Below, in pieces: positions 4,933 to 34,288 of a DNA stretch of 64,000 nt. The stretch spans positions 46,863,376 to 46,927,375 of the forward strand of contig NC_068998.1 of NCBI RefSeq assembly GCF_001194135.2. The letters run 5' to 3'. Under the pieces are notes generated by a model that was given only the letters and a program-made list of their open reading frames with translations, was not told the DNA's origin and ran no database searches. The position numbers were made by a program, and so were the translations under genes. The stretch comes from Octopus bimaculoides. Taxonomy: Eukaryota. Within the stretch, counting starts at the first letter, position 1. Every line of letters begins with the position of its first letter.

Positions 4933-5110
4933 CGACATTTCTTCCGGCTCTTTACGTTCTGAACTTGAATGCCGTCGAGGCTGACTTTGCCTTTCATCCT
5001 TCTGAGGTTAATAAAATAAGTTACTAGTCCAGTCCTGGACCCGATGAGATCGAGTGACACCCTTTCAAGAAAAAAAAAAATCTGTTGATCTTGTGTCAAA
5101 ATTTGAAACA
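4933..5110 (+). mobile_element. SINE family C, 5'-truncated
   Basis: ctttacgttctgaacttgaatgccgtcgaggctgactttgcctttcatcc, shared with 38797-39030 and others; tail ttgtgtcaaaatttgaaac. Confidence 0.8.
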
Positions 5111-5115
5111 ATTTA

Positions 5116-5292
5116 AAGGCGGCGAACTGGACGGCCTGAGTTCAAATGCCGCCAAGGTTGACTTTGCATTTCATCCTCTCAGAAATGGATGAATAGGGTA
5201 CCAATTGAGCACGGGAGGTGGGGCGATGTAATCAAGTAGCAACCTCCTCCAAAATTTCAGCGCTTGTGCCAGTAATAGAAAGGATTATTATT
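5116..5292 (+). mobile_element. SINE family C with internal deletion and (ATT)n tail
   Basis: aggcggcgaactgg head, gagttcaaat B box, gactttgcatttcatcc core, aaatttcagcgcttgtgcc...gaaaggattattatt tail. Confidence 0.85.
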
Positions 5293-5860
5293 GTTGAGTG
5301 AGAGAGAGCAGTGCATGCCATCAAAATGACACTGGGGTAAGATATATGAAGCCAAGTATACCCATAATTACTACCTGTCTGATAAGGTACACCAGGCACA
5401 TGCATCACAACCATATATCTGTGACATGGTGATCTCATATCAAGATAAACAGCACGTGACCTTGCAGGTGGGGCCCAGTTAGAATTTTCTTCAGGTTGTG
5501 TAGCCCATCCCACTCAAAAGGTCACTGAATACGGGTTGTTAAAGGATGTTGAACGAAACACCCATGTTTCCAAAGGTGAATTATTCAAACCCCAAAGAAT
5601 TCCTCTCAACACATGGCTGTGATGCTCCCTCCACTACTTCTGCTCATGATCAGAGATGCACATATCGTCAGCCACTAAGGGACATGCTCAACTGGTTCAG
5701 GTCAAACAACTGACGAGCAAATCTGTGGTATTAAGCAGAATATTTGCTTTAGCCTATCTTTTTATACCAAGACAAAACAATGTATATGATAGCACTTCCA
5801 TTCAATTAAGATCAAAAGCCACGAGAGTCACTGTCTGGTACTGCGTCAGGGCGTTTATTA
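5293..5860 (-). mobile_element. Unclassified interspersed repeat family D (about 565 bp), probably a retroposon 3' region with an (AAT)n tail
   Basis: Second copy at 19833-20089 and two 3' stubs at 56001 and 56217. No ORF. (ATT)n on both sides. Confidence 0.8.
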
Positions 5861-12330: not shown

Positions 12331-12529
12331 AACGCGTTGGTTTCGTAGTATTTAGAACTATTAATGCTATAATTCTGCCACATCTATAGAACGAATATAT
12401 AGCTTTAAACTACAGATGGGAGGAAAAAGTAGAAATAAACTCTTGCATATAAGAAAATATAATTAATATATATCTTCTCTGTGCATCCATCTACAACAGT
12501 TTCTTTACTCCAACATTTCTCCCGGCTTT

Positions 12530-12690
12530 ATATTCAGAATTCAAATTCCGCCGAAATTACCTTTGCCTTTTATCTCTTCGAGGGCGAGGAAAGAGGAACC
12601 AGTTGAGCACCGGAGACAATGTTACCGACTAGACCACATATCCCACCTCTACAAAGTTTCAGGTCTTGTGCCAATAGTAGAAAGAGTTAT
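12530..12690 (+). mobile_element. SINE family C, degraded and 5'-truncated
   Basis: aattcaaattccgccg...ctttgcctttt...accagttgagcac...tttcaggtcttgtgccaatagtagaaag. Confidence 0.75.
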
Positions 12691-13457
12691 TTGAAGATAT
12701 TGGTACTAGGATTAACTAGGAGGCGGTGGCTTAACTGACTTTGCTAGCGATGATGTTGACGGATTTCAACATTTTGATAAAATTTAAACACTGTAGTATG
12801 TTTTTTTTTTTTTGCTTATAATATACGACTCTGCTAGTTTGTTGTATTATATATAAATTAGAGATTTTATTGTCATTTGTAACGTTTTACAGCTGCTGGT
12901 ATATTTGCGCTGTAAGTCACTGTATTTCATGTCTGATCTCCTTGCATCATGTACAATGATACGACTTACTTAGTTGCTGGAAAATGTTTACTGTTACAGC
13001 TAAGATATATTTATTGTTTTCTCTTGGTGTATTTTATTAGGACATTCATGGAAATCTTCAATGTCAATGACTCTCTCTAGTTTGTACTAACAACGGATAT
13101 ATCAATATTTTCATTTGTAACTTTATACAATATTTTTCTGCTGTAACTGAGCTACTTTTTGCTTTCTCGTTGTTGTTGTTGTTGCTTTTCTTTTTCATCT
13201 CAGGTTCTGTTGTAACTCCTGGAGTCTTGCATGCGTAACGGGCTTGTTGCCTGCAGCCTACGGTACCATGCTATATTTTCTTTTCAACTGTCTAATACTT
13301 ACCTGATTATTCTGGCCGTGCCAAGGAGGTAAACCTAAATCATCATCATCATTATTCTCCATAAAATAAATGCAAATTGTCTACTAATGTCGATTAATAA
13401 CTTTATTGTTACCTCTTTCTTGTATTCACATTCAAGTTACTTATATAGAAAATTAGA

Positions 13458-14707: not shown

Positions 14708-14850
14708 TATGTGGTTTCGGGTTCAGTCCCACTACGTGGCACCTTCACCAAGTGTGTCTTCTACTATAGCCTCGGGCCGACCAAAACCTTATGAGTGGAT
14801 TTGGTAGACGGAAACTGAAAGAAGCCCGTCGTATTTATATATATATGTGT

Positions 14851-14889
<39 letters not shown>

Positions 14890-15107
14890 GTGTGTGTGTG
14901 TGTCTGTGCTTGTCCGCCCAACATCGCTTGACAACCGGATGCTGGTGTGTTTACGTCCCCGTATGCTAGTGGTTCGGCAAAAGAGACCGATAGAATAAGT
15001 ACTAGGCTTACAAAGAATAAGTCATGGGGTTGATTTGTTCGACTAAAGGCGGTGATCCAGCATGGCCACAGTCAAATGGCTGAAACAAATAAAAGAATAA
15101 AAGAATA
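14708..15107 (+). mobile_element. SINE family A, near full-length reference copy with internal (GT)n
   Basis: B box gggttcagtccc, left arm, about 75-bp (TA)(GT)n spacer, right arm ending in a taaaaga repeated tail. Confidence 0.92.
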
Positions 15108-16848: not shown

Positions 16849-16887
<39 letters not shown>

Positions 16888-18744
16888 TACATGTGTTTGT
16901 GTTTATATGCACATACAGAAAGCACACACATACATACAGAATCACACACATGTCTGTGTATCTTATATATTTGCATATACATATACATACATATATACAT
17001 ATATAAACACATTCATACACATGTATATATATATATATATATATATATAACCTGTTTAAGAGATATTATTAGCATTTGTTTCAAAATCACTTAAAAGGCG
17101 AATATTCACAAGGAATTGTTTTCGGAACCCCCAGTTTAAGTCACCCAGTTTAATAGATTCTCATTTGCACCAATAATTACTGTACCAGTTGCTTATATTA
17201 GCAAATGCCAATGTGTCGTCTGAAAAATCTGAGGGGGTGGGGGCTTAGACCAAAAAGAGACCAACGAACAATGGGATCTTTACAAAATACTGGAAGTCCA
17301 ATAGTAAAAGTATACAGGACCTGTTTCTAAAGTTCAACTTGAAACAGATTGCTTCTGTTATCGAAATTCCGGCTTTCGAGCTTCTGTTTCTTTTGTTAGA
17401 AACCAGTTTGTTGTCTTTTTTTCGGGGAAGAATTCGAATAACATTAAAGAGATAACTATTCATTTGTAAGCAGTATACACGATGTACATAAACAAGGATA
17501 TCTACGTAAAAATACACACACACACACGTACACTTACACACACGCGTACATACACACACACGTACACACACACACACACGCGTACACACACACACGTACA
17601 CGTATACAGTTGCTAACTGTATCTGTAAAATAGATAGATAGATAGATACTTTTGTTTGGTATGTAAATACATACATGTACACACACGCATATACAGAGAG
17701 AAACACAGATAGAAAGACATATATATATATATATATATATATATANNNNNNNNNNNNNNNNNNNNNNNNNNNNNNNNNNNNNNNNNNNNNNNNNNNNNNN
17801 NNNNNNNNNNNNNNNNNNNNNNNNNNNNNNNNNNNNNNNNNNNNNNNNNNNNNNNNNNNNNNNNNNNNNNNNNNNNNNNNNNNNNNNNNNNNNNNNNNNN
17901 NNNNNNNNNNNNNNNNNNNNNNNNNNNNNNNNNNNNNNNNNNNNNNNNNNNNNNNNNNNNNNNNNNNNNNNNNNNNNNNNNNNNNNNNNNNNNNNNNNNN
18001 NNNNNNNNNNNNNNNNNNNNNNNNNNNNNNNNNNNNNNNNNNNNNNNNNNNNNNNNNNNNNNNNNNNNNNNNNNNNNNNNNNNNNNNNNNNNNNNNNNNN
18101 NNNNNNNNNNNNNNNNNNNNNNNNNNNNNNNNNNNNNNNNNNNNNNNNNNNNNNNNNNNNNNNNNNNNNNNNNNNNNNNNNNNNNNNNNNNNNNNNNNNN
18201 NNNNNNNNNNNNNNNNNNNNNNNNNNNNNNNNNNNNNNNNNNNNNNNNNNNNNNNNNNNNNNNNNNNNNNNNNNNNNNNNNNNNNNNNNNNNNNNNNNNN
18301 NNNNNNNNNNNNNNNNNNNNNNNNNNNNNNNNNNNNNNNNNNNNNNNNNNNNNNNNNNNNNNNNNNNNNNNNNNNNNNNNNNNNNNNNNNATATATATAT
18401 ACTTTATATATATTCCCACATGTACGACATGTAGTACGTATTATCACCTATGTACGTACGTCCATGTGTATGAAGAAATAGATAAATATATGTTTATGTA
18501 TGTGTAACTATGTATTTATCAGACGCGTACCGCAATGTGTAGCAGCGTCTTCCAAAATAAAAGCTAAACTATAAGTACTGATAACTAATTATTAAAACTC
18601 GATAATTTCCAATTATAAAAGCATGCTAATTTAACGTAATTGGTTATTTAATTTTGTAAATGGTTGATATTTTAATGTTGAAGAAGTCCAATACTCGCTG
18701 ACCTTCAGTTCAAGATATTCATTATATAATAGCGTAATAACAAT

Positions 18745-18957
18745 GATTCTTTCTACTATAGGCATAAAGCATAATAACATTGGGAGAGTGGGTATGCTTA
18801 GTTCAGTACATCGACTCCAGGGCCAAACTGGTGCATGTGTTAACGATCCAGAAAGGACGGAAGGCGAAGTTGATATAGGCGGAATTTGTATTCAGAACGT
18901 AAAGACAAAAGAAATGCTGCCAAGCATTCCTCCGTTGCTGTAAGAATTCTGCCAGCT
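18745..18957 (-). mobile_element. SINE family C, diverged
   Basis: ggcggaatttgtattcagaacgtaaagac...attctgccagct and ctactataggcata tail on the opposite strand. Confidence 0.8.
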
Positions 18958-18980
18958 GGACTTTATAATGGTTTCTAATA

Positions 18981-19260
18981 TGGTTGACTTAAACTGGGTG
19001 ACTTAAACTGGGTGACTTAAACTGGGTGACTTAAACTGGGTGACTTAAACTGGGTGACTTAAACTGGGTGACTTAAACTGGGTGACTTAAACTGGTTGAC
19101 TTAAACTGGGTGACTTAAACTGGTTGACTTAAAGTGGTTGACTTAAACTGGGTGACTTAAACTGGTTGACTTAAACTGGGTGACTTAAACTGGGTGACTT
19201 AAACTGGTTGACTTAAACTGGGTGACTTAAACTGGGTGACTTAAACTGGGTGACTTAAAC
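18981..19260. repeat. 14-bp minisatellite tgg(g/t)tgacttaaac x20
   Basis: 280 bp = 20 units; variation is limited to g/t at position 4 and one aaag variant. Confidence 0.97.
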
Positions 19261-19762
19261 TGGGGGTTCCGAAAACAATTCCTTGTGAATATTCGCCTTT
19301 TAAGTGATTTTGAAACAAATGCTAATAATATCTCTTAAACAGGTTATATATATATAAAAACAAAAGTAAATGAGTATATGCATATATACGTACAGGTATG
19401 TGCATACCGACATCCACCTGTATGTATAGGTGCATATCTGGGTACAGGACATTGCAAACAAACGTAGACGAGAACACACGAGCCACATAGAGAACATTCT
19501 ACTTCATCAGCTACCCACGTTTTAACACCGGCGNNNNNNNNNNNNNNNNNNNNNNNNNNNNNNNNNNNNNNNNNNNNNNNNNNNNNNNNNNNNNNNNNNN
19601 NNNNNNNNNNNNNNNNNNNNNNNNNNNNNNNNNNNNNNNNNNNNNNNNNNNNNNNNNNNNNNNNNNNNNNNNNNNNNNNNNNNNNNNNGCAACGTTAAAA
19701 CGGCTCGTCCCATGGATCGCAGATTAAATCTGTATACGCAAATTAAATCTAGCCATGGAGGA

Positions 19763-19794
<32 letters not shown>

Positions 19795-19832
19795 GTGTGT
19801 GTGTATTTTTACGTAGATATCCTTGTTTATGT

Positions 19833-20089
19833 GCGTGACATCTCACATCAAGATAAACAGCGCATGACCTTGAAGGTGGGACCCAATTAGAATTTTCTTC
19901 GGGTCGCGTAGCGCATCCCGCTCAAAAGGTCCCTGAATAAAGGTTGTTTAAGGATGATGAACAAAACACCCATGTTTCCAAAGGTGAATTATCCAAACCC
20001 CAAAGAATTCCTCTCAACACATGACTGCGATGCTCCTCAACCACTTCTGCTCATGATCAGAGATGCACACATCATAAGACACTAAGGGA
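19833..20089 (-). mobile_element. Family D internal fragment
   Basis: Collinear, high-identity match to 5420-5682. Confidence 0.9.
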
Positions 20090-21951: not shown

Positions 21952-22160
21952 AAGGCGGCGAGCTAGCAGAATCGTTGGCACGCCGGTAAAATGTTCAGCG
22001 GCATTTTATCCATTTTTACGTCCTGAGTTCAATTTCCGTTGTGGTCGGCTTTTCCTTTCTGCGTTAATAAATTAAATACCAATGGAGCACTGAGGTTAAT
22101 GTAAACGGCTTAGCACCTACCCTGAAATTGCTGGCCTTGTGCTCAAACTTAAAACCAGTA
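21952..22160 (+). mobile_element. SINE family C, full-length
   Basis: aaggcggcgagctagcagaatcg head, tgagttcaatttcc B box, aaattgctggccttgtg tail. Confidence 0.88.
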
Positions 22161-23818: not shown

Positions 23819-24180
23819 CAGAGACAGACAGACAGACAGACAGATAGATAGACAGATAGATAGATATGCAGTATGAGCTAAGGGTCACGCACAAAATAAG
23901 TTCAACCCTCCCTGGAATTGTCAAAGACATGCCTAAATTTTTCTAAAATAAATAAAATAATGGTATTCACGTACTTGTGCATGATAAACAAAATGAATAA
24001 GGCTAGCAATTTCGGTGGGAGCAAAATTCTGTAGTAAATTCTCCAAGAAACTTTGCTTCTTTTTTTTAATTTATTAACGTAGGAATAAAAAAAAAAATCA
24101 GTACTATGACTTAAAATGAAATCGCTGCACGTAGCTATTGATACCGTGTCGGCGTCATGTCTATTCAATAAATAAAATCT

Positions 24181-24500
24181 ATTGTTGTTGGCACTCCGTC
24201 GCTTACGACGTCGAGGGTTCCAGTTGGTCCGATCAACGGAACAGCCTGCTCGTGAAATTAACGTGCGAGTGGCTGAGCACTCCACAGACATGTGTACCCT
24301 TAACGTAGTTCTCGGGGATATTCAACGTGACACAGTGTGACAAGGCTGACCCTTTGAATTACAGGCGCAACAGAAACAGGAAGAAAGAGTGAGAGAAAGT
24401 TGTGGTGGAAGAGCACAGCAGGGTTCGCCACCATCCCCTGCCGGAGCCTCATGGGGCTTTAGGTGCTTTTGCTCAATAAACACTCACAACGCCTGGTCTG
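24181..24500 (-). mobile_element. SINE family E, head lost in the gap, (ACA)n 3' tail
   Basis: Core ggcactccgtcgcttacgac...acccttaacgta is near-identical to 42302-42431 in the opposite orientation. Confidence 0.88.
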
Positions 24501-29227: not shown

Positions 29228-29420
29228 AGCACAAGACCTGCAATTTCAAGAGCGGGGACAAGTCGATTATATAGACCCCAGTGTTCAACTGGTACTTATT
29301 TCATCCATCCTGAAAGGATGAATGGCGAAGTCGACCTCGGTGGGATTAGAACTCAGAATGTAATGAGAGACGAAATGCCGCCAAGCGTTTTGTCCAGCGT
29401 GCTACCGATTCTACCGCCTT
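29228..29420 (-). mobile_element. SINE family C
   Basis: aagtcgattat...caactggtacttatt...gaagtcgacctcgg...gaactcagaatgt...accgcctt. Confidence 0.88.
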
Positions 29421-30868: not shown

Positions 30869-31517
30869 NNNNNNNNNNNNNNNNNNNNNNNNNNNNNNNN
30901 NNNNNNNNNNNNNNNNNNNNNNNNNNNNNNNNNNNNNNNNNNNNNNNNNNNNNNNNNNNNNNNNNNNNNNNNNNNNNNNNNNNNNNNNNNNNNNNNNNNN
31001 NNNNNNNNNNNNNNNNNNNNNNNNNNNNNNNNNNNNNNNNNNNNNNNNNNNNNNNNNNNNNNNNNNNNNNNNNNNNNNNNNNNNNNNNNNNNNNNNNNNN
31101 NNNNNNNNNNNNNNNNNNNNNNNNNNNNNNNNNNNNNNNNNNNNNNNNNNNNNNNNNNNNNNNNNNNNNNNNNNNNNNNNNNNNNNNNNNNNNNNNNNNN
31201 NNNNNNNNNNNNNNNNNNNNNNNNNNNNNNNNNNNNNNNNNNNNNNNNNNNNNNNNNNNNNNNNNNNNNNNNNNNNNNNNNNNNNNNNNNNNNNNNNNNN
31301 NNNNNNNNNNNNNNNNNNNNNNNNNNNNNNNNNNNNNNNNNNNNNNNNNNNNNNNNNNNNNNNNNNNNNNNNNNNNNNNNNNNNNNNNNNNNNNNNNNNN
31401 NNNNNNNNNNNNNNNNNNNNNNNNNNNNNNNNNNNNNNNNNNNNNNNNNNNNNNNNNNNNNNNNNNNNNNNNNNNNNNNNNNNNNNNNNNNNNNNNNNNN
31501 NNNNNNNNNNNNNNNNC

Positions 31518-31922
31518 TTAATCTCTTGAGTCTTTCCCAATAGCTTGTATGCTGCATAGAGGCTATCTTCTTCGTGTAGCTTCGTTGGATTGCCTCAAGT
31601 TCTGAGATTAATTTGACACTGGTTGGTGACCATAGCTGAGAGCAATAGTCAAAGTGGCTTAGAACAAGTGTCTTCCAGAGCACCATCATGGTTTCCTGAT
31701 CTCTTGTTCTAAAAGTCCTTAGAATCCATCCGGTTAGTCGCCTGCATTTCATTGACAATTTAGCAACATGAACATGAAAGGATGCATTATTACTCATGTA
31801 GATGCCCAGGTCTCGCACTGTCTCTGCCTCTGGGATTGCAGTCCCTCCAGGTCCAGTGTATTTAATGGATTCTGCATTTAGTCTTGCATGCTGAGAGCAT
31901 AAGGCTTGAAACTTGAAACTTT
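31518..31922 (-). mobile_element. CR1/L2-like LINE ORF2 fragment (C-terminal of the RT core), 5'-truncated, 3' part in the gap
   Basis: KFQALC...VRDLGIYMSNNASFHVHV...WILRTFRTRD..TMMVLWKTLVLSHFDYCSQLWSP....ISELEAIQRSYTKKI...SYWERLKRL fits the RDLG/LY..LV...EY..VWSP/LE.VQR..TK/Y.ERL motif series. Confidence 0.9.
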
Positions 31923-33596: not shown

Positions 33597-34074
33597 CATA
33601 CGTCAACCTTTCATTGTTAAGCGTGTGTTCAACGTGTTTGATATATAACATACTACAGCCAAGAGCAGAAACTTAAACAGGAAGTTAAAGGACATAATGG
33701 ATGCTGACCTACAGATAAATATGAGACGATTTAACGAGAGGGCGGTCCTAACCATTTGTTATGCATTGTGCTGAGAATTGGTATTTAGAAAGAATTATTC
33801 GTTGAACAAATTCCACAGAATTATTTTCCTCATTATTTCAGTATACTATAATTACTTTCCGCAAAACGGTTTTACGGATTTTGTAAAAGCAATATGACCG
33901 ATGAAACAAGAAGTTTCTATGTCTCCGCCAGTCTACGTTTACTCTTTGTGCGGAAGAACACTGTACAATCTCATCTTTATCATATCGGTTTCTACTAATT
34001 CTTTTCCCCATTTCTAATTCCATATTTTGTTGTTGAAGATATAGTAAAGTAACAACAACAACAGCAACAACAAT

Positions 34075-34288
34075 TCTTTCTATTATAGGCACAAGGCCTG
34101 AAATTTGGTGGTGAGAGAAGCCTAGTCAATTACATCGATCTCCTGTGCACACCTGGTGTTTTATTTCGTCTTTCCTGGAAGGACGAAATGCGAAGTAGAC
34201 TTGGTCGGAATCTGAACTCATAAAGCCGGAAGAAATGCCGCAAATAATTCTGTGCAGCATTCCAACGACTCTGCTGGCTCTCCGCTTT
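34075..34288 (-). mobile_element. SINE family C, full-length
   Basis: tataggcacaaggcctgaaattt tail through to the ctgctggctctccgcttt head. Confidence 0.85.

What the first reader, a model, noticed from the sequence alone, without database searches (positions are those of the whole stretch)
17050..19344. 2.3-kb TA-flanked foldback-like element: 100% identical 104-bp inverted ends with an asymmetric 14-bp array
Seen: 17050-17153 is the exact reverse complement of 19241-19344. Both ends read TA|ACCTG...CAGGT|TA inside (TA)n. The inner edge of each arm runs into a 14-bp repeat, with about 1.4 units on the left and 20 on the right. The interior holds ordinary old DNA (a diverged SINE C, microsatellites) and a gap. 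Established: foldback-type transposons have modular TIRs with unequal tandem-repeat numbers and heterogeneous loops. Inference: a young non-autonomous element with ACCTG termini, which I do not recognise, that carries captured genomic DNA and possibly targets (TA)n. Alternatives are two opposed insertions of a small element or an assembly artefact.
Basis: partly seen in the sequence, partly recalled or inferred. Interest (0 to 1): 0.7.

Follow-up and report, generated by a model that had tools for sequence, protein, structure and literature searches.

The report
Unverified foldback-like transposon in (TA)n
Two perfectly identical 104-base inverted ends, one with a 20-copy 14-base array, really are in the sequence and most likely mark a young non-coding DNA transposon in a TA microsatellite, but they sit on two small contigs joined only by scaffolding, so the element cannot be proven from this window.

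Summary
17050-17153 is the exact reverse complement of 19241-19344. The match extends outward only through palindromic (TA)n. A 14-bp array has about 1.6 units on the left and 20.3 on the right. The interior contains an old SINE-like copy, microsatellites and a 645-N gap.

Three things qualify the interpretation:
- The arms lie on different small contigs (897 and 1143 bp), each bounded by gaps, so order and orientation rest on scaffolding alone.
- The "TA" duplication is uninformative: any even length from 2 to 12 bp fits.
- No other copy could be found. The window has none, and no eukaryotic genome DNA was reachable.

In favour of a real transposon end, homology stops sharply at ACCTG. The terminal CCTGTTTAAG recurs in every 14-bp unit (CCAGTTTAAG) and once inverted inside the arm, as in Tetris/Galileo-type foldback elements.

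My estimates are:
- one non-autonomous TIR/foldback-like element, about 0.45;
- two separate 5'-truncated ends of a (TA)n-associated retroelement (Penelope-like behaviour), about 0.25;
- scaffold patchwork, about 0.25.

No superfamily can be assigned. Interest is modest.

The parts
17024..17049 (.). (TA)13 abutting the left end. It is either the target microsatellite with an ambiguous duplication or, in the rival reading, a 3' tail.
17050..17131 (+). Left arm, 82-nt unique terminal domain starting ACCTGTTTAAGAG. It carries the motif TTTAAG[AT][CG]A at nt 6-14 and, inverted, at nt 38-46.
17132..17153 (+). Left arm, about 1.6 units of the 14-bp repeat (CAGTTTAAGTCACC CAGTTTAA). Homology with the right arm ends here.
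17154..17745 (.). Left interior (rest of contig A). It comprises 332 nt unique in the window, the 39-nt segment X' (17486-17524), then (CA)n, (TAGA)n and (TA)13 up to the gap. No coding capacity was found.
17746..18390 (.). Assembly gap of 645 N (length estimated), bounded by (TA)n on both sides. Continuity, order and orientation across it are untested.
18391..18980 (.). Right interior (start of contig B): low-complexity TA/CA-rich DNA, then an old SINE-like copy (about 18741-18920, possibly to about 18960, minus strand) that ends roughly 20-60 nt from the array.
18981..19264 (-). 14-bp tandem array of 20.3 units at 95% identity. Read inward from the right end, the unit is CAGTTTAAGTCACC. Units 4, 7, 9, 10, 12 and 20 carry a C-to-A variant.
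19263..19344 (-). Right arm, 82-nt unique terminal domain ending ...CTCTTAAACAGGT. The exact inverted repeat with the left arm covers 19241-19344.
19345..19356 (.). (TA)6 abutting the right end.

Best explanation
A young, non-autonomous class II (cut-and-paste) element of foldback-like build has inserted into a (TA)n microsatellite.

Each end has an 82-nt unique terminal domain beginning ACCTGTTTAAG. Behind it lies a tandem array of a 14-bp unit that repeats the terminal motif (CCAGTTTAAG). I infer that a transposase supplied in trans by an unseen autonomous relative binds this motif at the tip and in the array, pairs the two ends and moves the DNA between them.

The middle (old SINE-like copy, microsatellites) is passenger or filler DNA without coding capacity. 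The unequal arrays (about 1.6 vs 20 units) would come from slippage, unequal exchange or an internal deletion.

Shown: the anatomy, the sharp ends, the motif repetition and the lack of coding capacity. Inferred: mobility, single-element status, the transposase and the (TA)n target preference. The superfamily is unassigned.
For: - The inverted repeat is exact over 104 nt and unique in the window.
- Homology stops exactly at ACCTG. Flanks beyond the (TA)n are no more alike than random (TA)n flanks; 14.6% of control pairs score as high. Inner continuations are unrelated. The same junction was therefore not assembled twice.
- The ends face outward, and the joined flanks would restore a single (TA)n tract with an abutting direct repeat of 2-12 nt.
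- The terminal 16-mer contains a 9/10 match to the array unit, reached by only 0.18% of background 16-mers.
- The motif TTTAAG[AT][CG]A occurs at the tip, inverted at nt 38-46 and in every unit, against 0.09 per kb in the background. Tetris and Galileo foldback elements show the same relation between tip and internal repeats (PMC4079207).
- Neither arm taken alone has a convincing duplication of its own beyond TA..TA.
- By my own rough estimate, two independent copies landing within 2.3 kb, ends outward, with none in the other ~53 kb, has a probability of about 2%.
- Young TIR families are reported in Octopus vulgaris (PMC13282606). The window's SINE-like consensus looks octopod to me, but that is from memory only.
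Against: - The arms are on different contigs, A 16849-17745 and B 18391-19533, each bounded by gaps. Pairing, orientation and the 2.3-kb size depend on scaffolding.
- No second copy, empty site or autonomous relative was found anywhere I could search.
- The duplication length is undetermined.
- From memory, ACCTG...CAGGT termini match no superfamily I know. The mariner-type MITE in this same window (51223-51491) has quite different ends.
- The interior next to the array is a ~25%-diverged SINE-like copy while the arms are identical. That is equally what two separate young insertions into old DNA would give.
- A second perfect inverted match (17486-17524 vs 19794-19832) interleaves with the arms. 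This hints at patchwork in the stretch.
Confidence: 0.45

Rival explanations
1. The arms are two separate, 5'-truncated 3' ends of one young retroelement family that is tied to (TA)n microsatellites. This is Penelope-like or microsatellite-specific LINE behaviour. The family's 3' region holds the 14-bp array and ends ...AAACAGGT next to (TA)n. One copy is truncated to 104 nt and the other to at least 364 nt. They lie head-to-head in old DNA, so the 'element' is a coincidental or mechanistically linked inverted pair, not a cut-and-paste unit.
For: - (TA)n lies only on the ACCTG side of each arm, never on the inner side.
- The inner ends are unequal and abrupt, as 5' truncation gives.
- The DNA between them is old generic sequence right up to the array.
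- Naiad/Neptune PLEs prefer (TA)n and are highly 5'-truncated. They often carry an adjacent inverted truncated copy that creates inverted repeats, hide their duplications and break short-read assemblies (PMC8557442).
- Penelope and Dong-R4 families are among the recently active elements in O. vulgaris (PMC13282606).
- A second microsatellite-linked perfect match, X joined to (GT)n/(CA)n, is present in the same 3 kb.
Against: - No hammerhead or any other Rfam match occurs in or near the arms.
- No RT or GIY-YIG-like ORF is readable in the interior.
- In PLEs the inverted copy abuts the main copy. Here about 1.8 kb of unrelated old DNA separates them.
- Neither arm has a flanking duplication of its own.
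- Independent insertion in this geometry, with no other copy in the window, is improbable by my estimate (about 2%).
- The repeat of the terminal motif in the array is more typical of transposase-binding ends.
Confidence: 0.25
2. The structure is an artefact of scaffolding or repeat resolution. Both junctions are real somewhere in the genome, but contigs A and B were brought together, oriented or threaded through a collapsed 104-nt repeat wrongly. The paired 2.3-kb structure then does not exist as drawn, and the 100% identity may simply reflect one collapsed repeat sequence used twice.
For: - Contigs A (897 bp), B (1143 bp) and C (881 bp) are each bounded by gaps.
- Contig A has palindromic (TA)n at both ends, so sequence overlap cannot orient it.
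- 13% of the window is N, in 21 gaps, mostly at microsatellites.
- Contig A shares two separate perfect inverted segments with downstream contigs, the arm with B and X with C. Their order (arm, X', arm', X) fits no simple duplication or palindrome.
- Inverted-repeat TE structures are known to upset short-read assemblies (PMC8557442).
Against: - Each arm lies well inside its contig. It has at least 175 nt of distinct outer flank and at least 590 nt of distinct inner sequence, so both junction sets must be read-supported.
- It is not one locus assembled twice.
- An artefact would not by itself place both (TA)n-abutting ends facing outward.
Confidence: 0.25
3. The arms arose by a local, non-transposon inverted duplication. 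A replication template switch or fold-back repair, primed in palindromic (TA)n, copied 104 nt to a site 2 kb away.
For: - (TA)n is palindromic and abuts both copies.
- A second short perfect inverted copy lies nearby.
- No other copy of the arm is seen in the window.
Against: - Fold-back events place the arms next to the central palindrome. Here the (TA)n tracts are outside and the arms are 2.1 kb apart.
- The two inverted pairs are interleaved, not mirror-symmetric.
- It does not explain the tip motif being repeated in the array.
Confidence: 0.05

Closest known systems
Foldback-like DNA transposons (Drosophila FB, Tetris/DAIBAM, Galileo)
   Same: The TIRs are built from a unique flanking domain plus an inner array of tandem repeats whose number differs between ends. 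The middle domain is variable and non-coding. The array shares a motif with the terminal domain, as with TIR-FD vs TIR-220 in Tetris and the extra transposase sites in Galileo repeats (PMC4079207).
   Different: - The arms here are short (82 nt plus array) against hundreds to more than 1,700 bp.
- The repeat unit is 14 bp rather than 10-31 or ~220 bp.
- The left array is almost absent.
- The duplication length (7 bp in Galileo; 8-10 bp in Tetris/Mutator-type) cannot be read here.
- No sequence similarity was tested or is expected.
- Copy number and mobility are unknown.
Penelope-like element insertions (Naiad, Neptune) with an inverted 5'-truncated copy
   Same: (TA)n is the insertion site, and no duplication can be discerned. 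The inverted repeats at the outer borders are identical, and one of them is short. These structures are also troublesome in short-read assemblies (PMC8557442).
   Different: No hammerhead motif was found. No RT/GIY-YIG coding sequence is present in the readable interior. The two copies do not abut but are separated by old SINE-bearing DNA.
Tc1/mariner-derived MITEs (TA duplication), such as the 269-bp palindromic MITE at 51223-51491 in this window
   Same: The elements are flanked by TA, lie in TA-rich DNA, are non-coding and have inverted ends.
   Different: - The ends here read ACCTG inward, whereas mariner-type ends read ..GGTTGGTGC.. inward. That is seen directly; the likeness of that MITE to MADE1/Hsmar1 is from memory.
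- This element has no tandem array equivalent in such MITEs and is 2.3 kb long.
- The TA duplication cannot be told apart from longer ones.
Tandem-repeat-containing MITE-like elements of molluscs (pearl and relatives)
   Same: These are mollusc interspersed elements with conserved flanking modules around an internal tandem array (from memory; pearl is listed among the references seen).
   Different: From memory, those have one central array of ~100-170-bp units and weak or no TIRs. Here the array is part of an inverted arm and the unit is 14 bp. Not tested.

Membership tests
Foldback-like elements (structural class) | Long terminal inverted repeats | tested here: met
   104/104 exact inverted repeat. 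This is short for the class, and the pairing depends on scaffolding across a gap.
Foldback-like elements (structural class) | TIRs contain tandem subrepeats whose number varies between ends or copies | tested here: met
   14-bp unit, about 1.6 units on the left vs 20.3 on the right.
Foldback-like elements (structural class) | Variable middle domain without coding capacity | tested here: inconclusive
   The readable 1,182 nt hold only microsatellites, a SINE-like copy and short ORFs, with no Pfam hit. 645 nt are unread.
Foldback-like elements (structural class) | Target site duplication of fixed length (7-10 bp in described families) | tested here: inconclusive
   An abutting direct repeat of any even length from 2 to 12 nt fits, and odd lengths do not. 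8 or 10 bp is possible; 7 or 9 bp is not.
Foldback-like elements (structural class) | Multiple dispersed copies or evidence of mobility | not testable with these tools
   No other copy occurs in the window. No eukaryotic genome DNA was reachable.
Tc1/mariner | TA target site duplication | tested here: inconclusive
   TA is present on both sides, but inside (TA)n.
Tc1/mariner | Characteristic TIR termini and a DD(E/D) transposase in autonomous copies | tested here: inconclusive
   The termini differ from the mariner-type MITE in the same window and, from memory, from CAGT/YYAGGT-type ends. No transposase ORF was found in the window. No autonomous copy is available.
Penelope-like element insertion | Inverted 5'-truncated copy immediately adjacent to the main copy | tested here: not met
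   The arms are separated by about 1.8 kb that includes an old SINE-like copy. One caveat is the gap and the scaffolding.
Penelope-like element insertion | Insertion bias for (TA)n microsatellites | tested here: met
   (TA)13 and (TA)6 abut the two outer ends. The feature is described in PMC8557442.
Penelope-like element insertion | Hammerhead ribozyme motif in the terminal repeat (canonical clades) and RT/GIY-YIG coding sequence | tested here: not met
   No Rfam hit at gathering level, and none for hammerheads at E<=10. No Pfam hit was found. Naiads lack hammerheads, so this is not decisive.
MITE | Small size (under about 0.8 kb), TIRs, duplication, high copy number | tested here: not met
   The span is 2,295 bp as scaffolded. 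Copy number is unknown.
Helitron | 5'-TC and 3'-CTRR ends, insertion between A and T, no TIRs | tested here: not met
   The ends are ACCTG/CAGGT with a 104-nt inverted repeat. The family definition is from memory.

The most novel reading that the evidence does not exclude
The arms are the ends of an undescribed, recently active cut-and-paste family in an octopod-like genome. Its ACCTG termini fit no catalogued superfamily. It targets (TA)n microsatellites and uses a 14-bp binding-site array, and it can carry kilobases of host DNA between its ends.
Probability: 0.15. Interest if true: 0.45.

Novelty: new member of a known kind. Interest (0 to 1): 0.3.

Why it matters
If real, it would be a young, possibly still mobile DNA transposon family in a cephalopod-like genome. 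It would have foldback-type ends and a microsatellite target. That would be useful for TE annotation, as a source of inverted repeats that can drive rearrangements, and as a link between TEs and mini- or microsatellites.

It also serves as a caution. Perfect inverted repeats that straddle gaps in short-read scaffolds cannot be called elements without genome-wide copies or long reads.

None of this would overturn current understanding. Foldback-like and microsatellite-targeting elements are well described.

Tried and rejected
- Other copies in the window: none.
- Other copies through protein databases:
  - the 65-aa ORF crossing the right end is not on record;
  - a query of all six-frame peptides of the arm found nothing;
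  - ten window ORFs are absent from the collection. The source genome is evidently not ORF-called there.
- DNA scans of the metagenome, viral and prokaryote collections with arm and array patterns: all empty.
- Literature search for the sequences: only unrelated primer or oligo hits. The SINE strings gave none.
- Organism identification through the RT-like fragment: only unnamed metagenome hits, 75% identity at best. The octopod assignment rests on my recollection of the SINE.
- 'One junction assembled twice': rejected, because the flanks and the inner sequences differ.
- Extended degenerate inverted homology inside the arms: none beyond low complexity.
- tRNA or Pol III origin of the arm: no ARAGORN hit, and only a loose B-box-like string.
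- Hammerhead or other RNA families: none.
- Special secondary structure in the arm: none, z = -1.1.
- Left interior as the other half of the SINE: no similarity.
- Harbinger-type TWA duplication: rejected, because TAA on the left and TTA on the right are not a direct repeat.
- Staggered-break inversion, to explain the interleaved arm/X pairs: rejected, because the duplicated blocks do not abut.

Full report
**What is there.** The window is eukaryotic draft sequence with 36.6% G+C. It has 21 gaps that make up 13% of the letters, and it is dense in microsatellites.
- 17050-17153 is the exact reverse complement of 19241-19344.
- The match continues outward for 12 nt only because both sides run into palindromic (TA)n. 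It does not continue inward.
- The 82-nt non-repetitive part of the arm occurs nowhere else in the window.
- Tandem Repeats Finder gives a 14-bp array at 18981-19264, with 20.3 units at 95% identity.
- The left arm holds one unit plus 8 nt.

**The gap, tested first.** The two arms are on different contigs: A (16849-17745, 897 bp) and B (18391-19533, 1143 bp). Each is bounded by gaps on both sides. The gap between them is flanked by (TA)n on both edges. Because at least 12 of the 21 gaps in the window have (TA)n at an edge, that only shows where this assembly fails. Contig A also begins and ends in palindromic (TA)n, so overlap cannot orient it. Continuity, order and orientation rest on read-pair scaffolding that I cannot inspect. 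No independent assembly or read set was reachable.

**What can be excluded.** The pair is not one junction assembled twice.
- Beyond the (TA)n, the outer flanks are no more similar than random pairs of (TA)n flanks in the window. The observed score was 17, and 14.6% of 2,354 control pairs reach it.
- The inner continuations are unrelated.

Two different junctions with the same 104-nt sequence therefore exist.

**The interior.**
- The right interior carries a SINE-like copy at about 18741-18920 on the minus strand. It is about 75% identical to a consensus built from the window's own copies. At least nine other copies in the window are 61-71% identical to it.
- Depending on how far the SINE head extends, this copy ends about 20-60 nt from the array.
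- The left interior (17154-17485) is unique in the window. It is followed by (CA)n, (TAGA)n and (TA)n.
- No ORF of substance, Pfam domain, tRNA or Rfam family is present.

The middle is old, non-coding DNA, while the arms show no difference in 104 nt.

**Evidence that the arm is a transposon end.**
- Homology stops exactly at ACCTG.
- The terminal CCTGTTTAAG is a 9/10 match to the array unit CCAGTTTAAG. Only 0.18% of background 16-mers do as well.
- The core TTTAAG[AT][CG]A occurs at nt 6-14, inverted at nt 38-46 and in every array unit, against 0.09 per kb elsewhere.

A tip motif reiterated in an internal tandem array is what is reported for Tetris (a 37-bp stretch shared between the flanking domain and the TIR-220 repeats). 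It is also reported for Galileo, where the repeats carry extra transposase-binding sites (PMC4079207). The motif was defined after looking, so the statistic is indicative only.

**The duplication.** The last n bases before 17050 equal the first n after 19344 for every even n from 2 to 12 and for no odd n.
- Compatible: TA (Tc1/mariner), 4 bp, 8 bp (hAT, P, some Mutator) and 10 bp.
- Excluded: 3, 7 and 9 bp, and TTAA.

'TA-flanked' is true but not diagnostic. The window has 42 (TA)n tracts of six or more units. Landing in one is unusual for a random site but not extraordinary for a TA-seeking enzyme.

**A complication.** A second perfect inverted match exists. 17486-17524 in contig A's interior equals the reverse complement of 19794-19832 in contig C, outside the element and beyond the next gap. 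Of its 39 nt, 29 are non-microsatellite, and none are expected by chance. In both places it is joined to (GT)n/(CA)n and then (TA)13. The order (arm, X', arm', X) is interleaved. It fits neither a palindrome, a simple inverted or tandem duplication, nor a staggered-break inversion. Two readings remain open:
- This stretch of sub-1.2-kb contigs is a patchwork.
- Short ends of microsatellite-associated repeats are scattered here. That would make 'two separate ends' more credible for the arms as well.

**Rivals.**
- *Penelope-like retroelements.* They insert preferentially in (TA)n (Naiad, probably Neptune) and are strongly 5'-truncated. They often carry an adjacent inverted truncated copy that creates identical inverted repeats, hide their duplications and upset short-read assemblies (PMC8557442). 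Penelope and Dong-R4 families are among the recently active elements in Octopus vulgaris (PMC13282606).
  - For: this reading explains why (TA)n lies only on the ACCTG side of each arm, the unequal abrupt inner ends and the old DNA between them.
  - Against: there is no hammerhead motif and no RT-like sequence. About 1.8 kb of unrelated DNA lies where the copies should abut. Neither arm alone has a duplication, and the geometry is improbable for independent hits (my estimate is about 2%).
- *Scaffold artefact.* It cannot be excluded, for the reasons given under the gap test.
- *Template-switch duplication.* It fits poorly.

**Verdict.**

| Reading | Probability |
|---|---|
| One non-autonomous TIR/foldback-like element in (TA)n | about 0.45 |
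| Two separate retroelement-type ends | about 0.25 |
| Scaffold patchwork | about 0.25 |
| Other | about 0.05 |

No superfamily can be assigned. The termini differ from the mariner-type MITE seen at 51223-51491 in the same window and, from memory, from all catalogued end motifs. If real, it is a new member of a known kind, a foldback-like element, and of modest interest.

**Searches that found nothing.**
- Exact-protein look-ups.
- A six-frame peptide query of the arm.
- DNA pattern scans of the metagenome, viral and prokaryote collections.
- Literature string searches.
- Homologues of the RT fragment were unnamed, so the octopod origin is my recollection of the SINE sequence, not a tested result.

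Noticed in passing
window 17486-17524 and 19794-19832: A 39-nt perfect inverted match, of which 29 nt are non-microsatellite (TATTTTTACGTAGATATCCTTGTTTATGT). One copy lies in the interior of contig A and the other in contig C, outside the element. In both places it is joined to (GT)n/(CA)n and then (TA)13. It interleaves with the 104-nt arms, and no match is expected by chance.
   Followed up: partly
window 51223-51491: A 269-bp near-palindromic, TA-flanked element with ends TTCGGTTGGTGCATAATTATTGCGG.../...CCGCAATAATTATGCACCAACCCAA and 76% self-complementarity. It looks like a mariner-derived MITE. From memory, the ends resemble Hsmar1/MADE1-type TIRs. It gives an in-window example of a true TA-flanked TIR element, with quite different termini.
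   Followed up: partly
window 18741-18920, 38806-39030, 34066-34250, 29261-29389, 12511-12691, 42526-42760, 49416-49574, 5131-5295, 4936-5046, 21961-22122: An old SINE-like interspersed family with at least 10 copies, 61-71% identical to one another. The consensus contains ...CTTTACGTTCTGAGTTCAAATTCCGCCGAGGTC...AAATTTCAGGCCTTGTGCC.... From memory it matches the abundant octopus SINE, which is the only clue to the organism.
   Followed up: partly
window 5432-5682 and 19840-20089: Two direct copies (89% identical over 251 nt) of another interspersed repeat. The copy in contig C starts right after segment X.
   Followed up: no
window 31519-31920 (minus strand), cut by gap 30869-31516: An open frame of 134 aa resembling the C-terminal part of a retroelement polyprotein. 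The best database relatives are unnamed metagenome proteins (75% identity, E=6e-45), and there is no Pfam hit.
   Followed up: partly
window 14917-15104 vs 61166-61353; 24167-24310 vs 42299-42443; 1866-2047 vs 14720-14908: Further repeat pairs at 86-92% identity. They are younger interspersed families and were not classified.
   Followed up: no
whole window: There are 21 gaps covering 13% of the letters. At least 12 have (TA)n at an edge, and others have (GT)n, (CT)n or (ATT)n. There are also 42 (TA)n tracts of six or more units. The assembly breaks systematically at microsatellites, so any feature spanning a gap here needs independent confirmation.
   Followed up: yes
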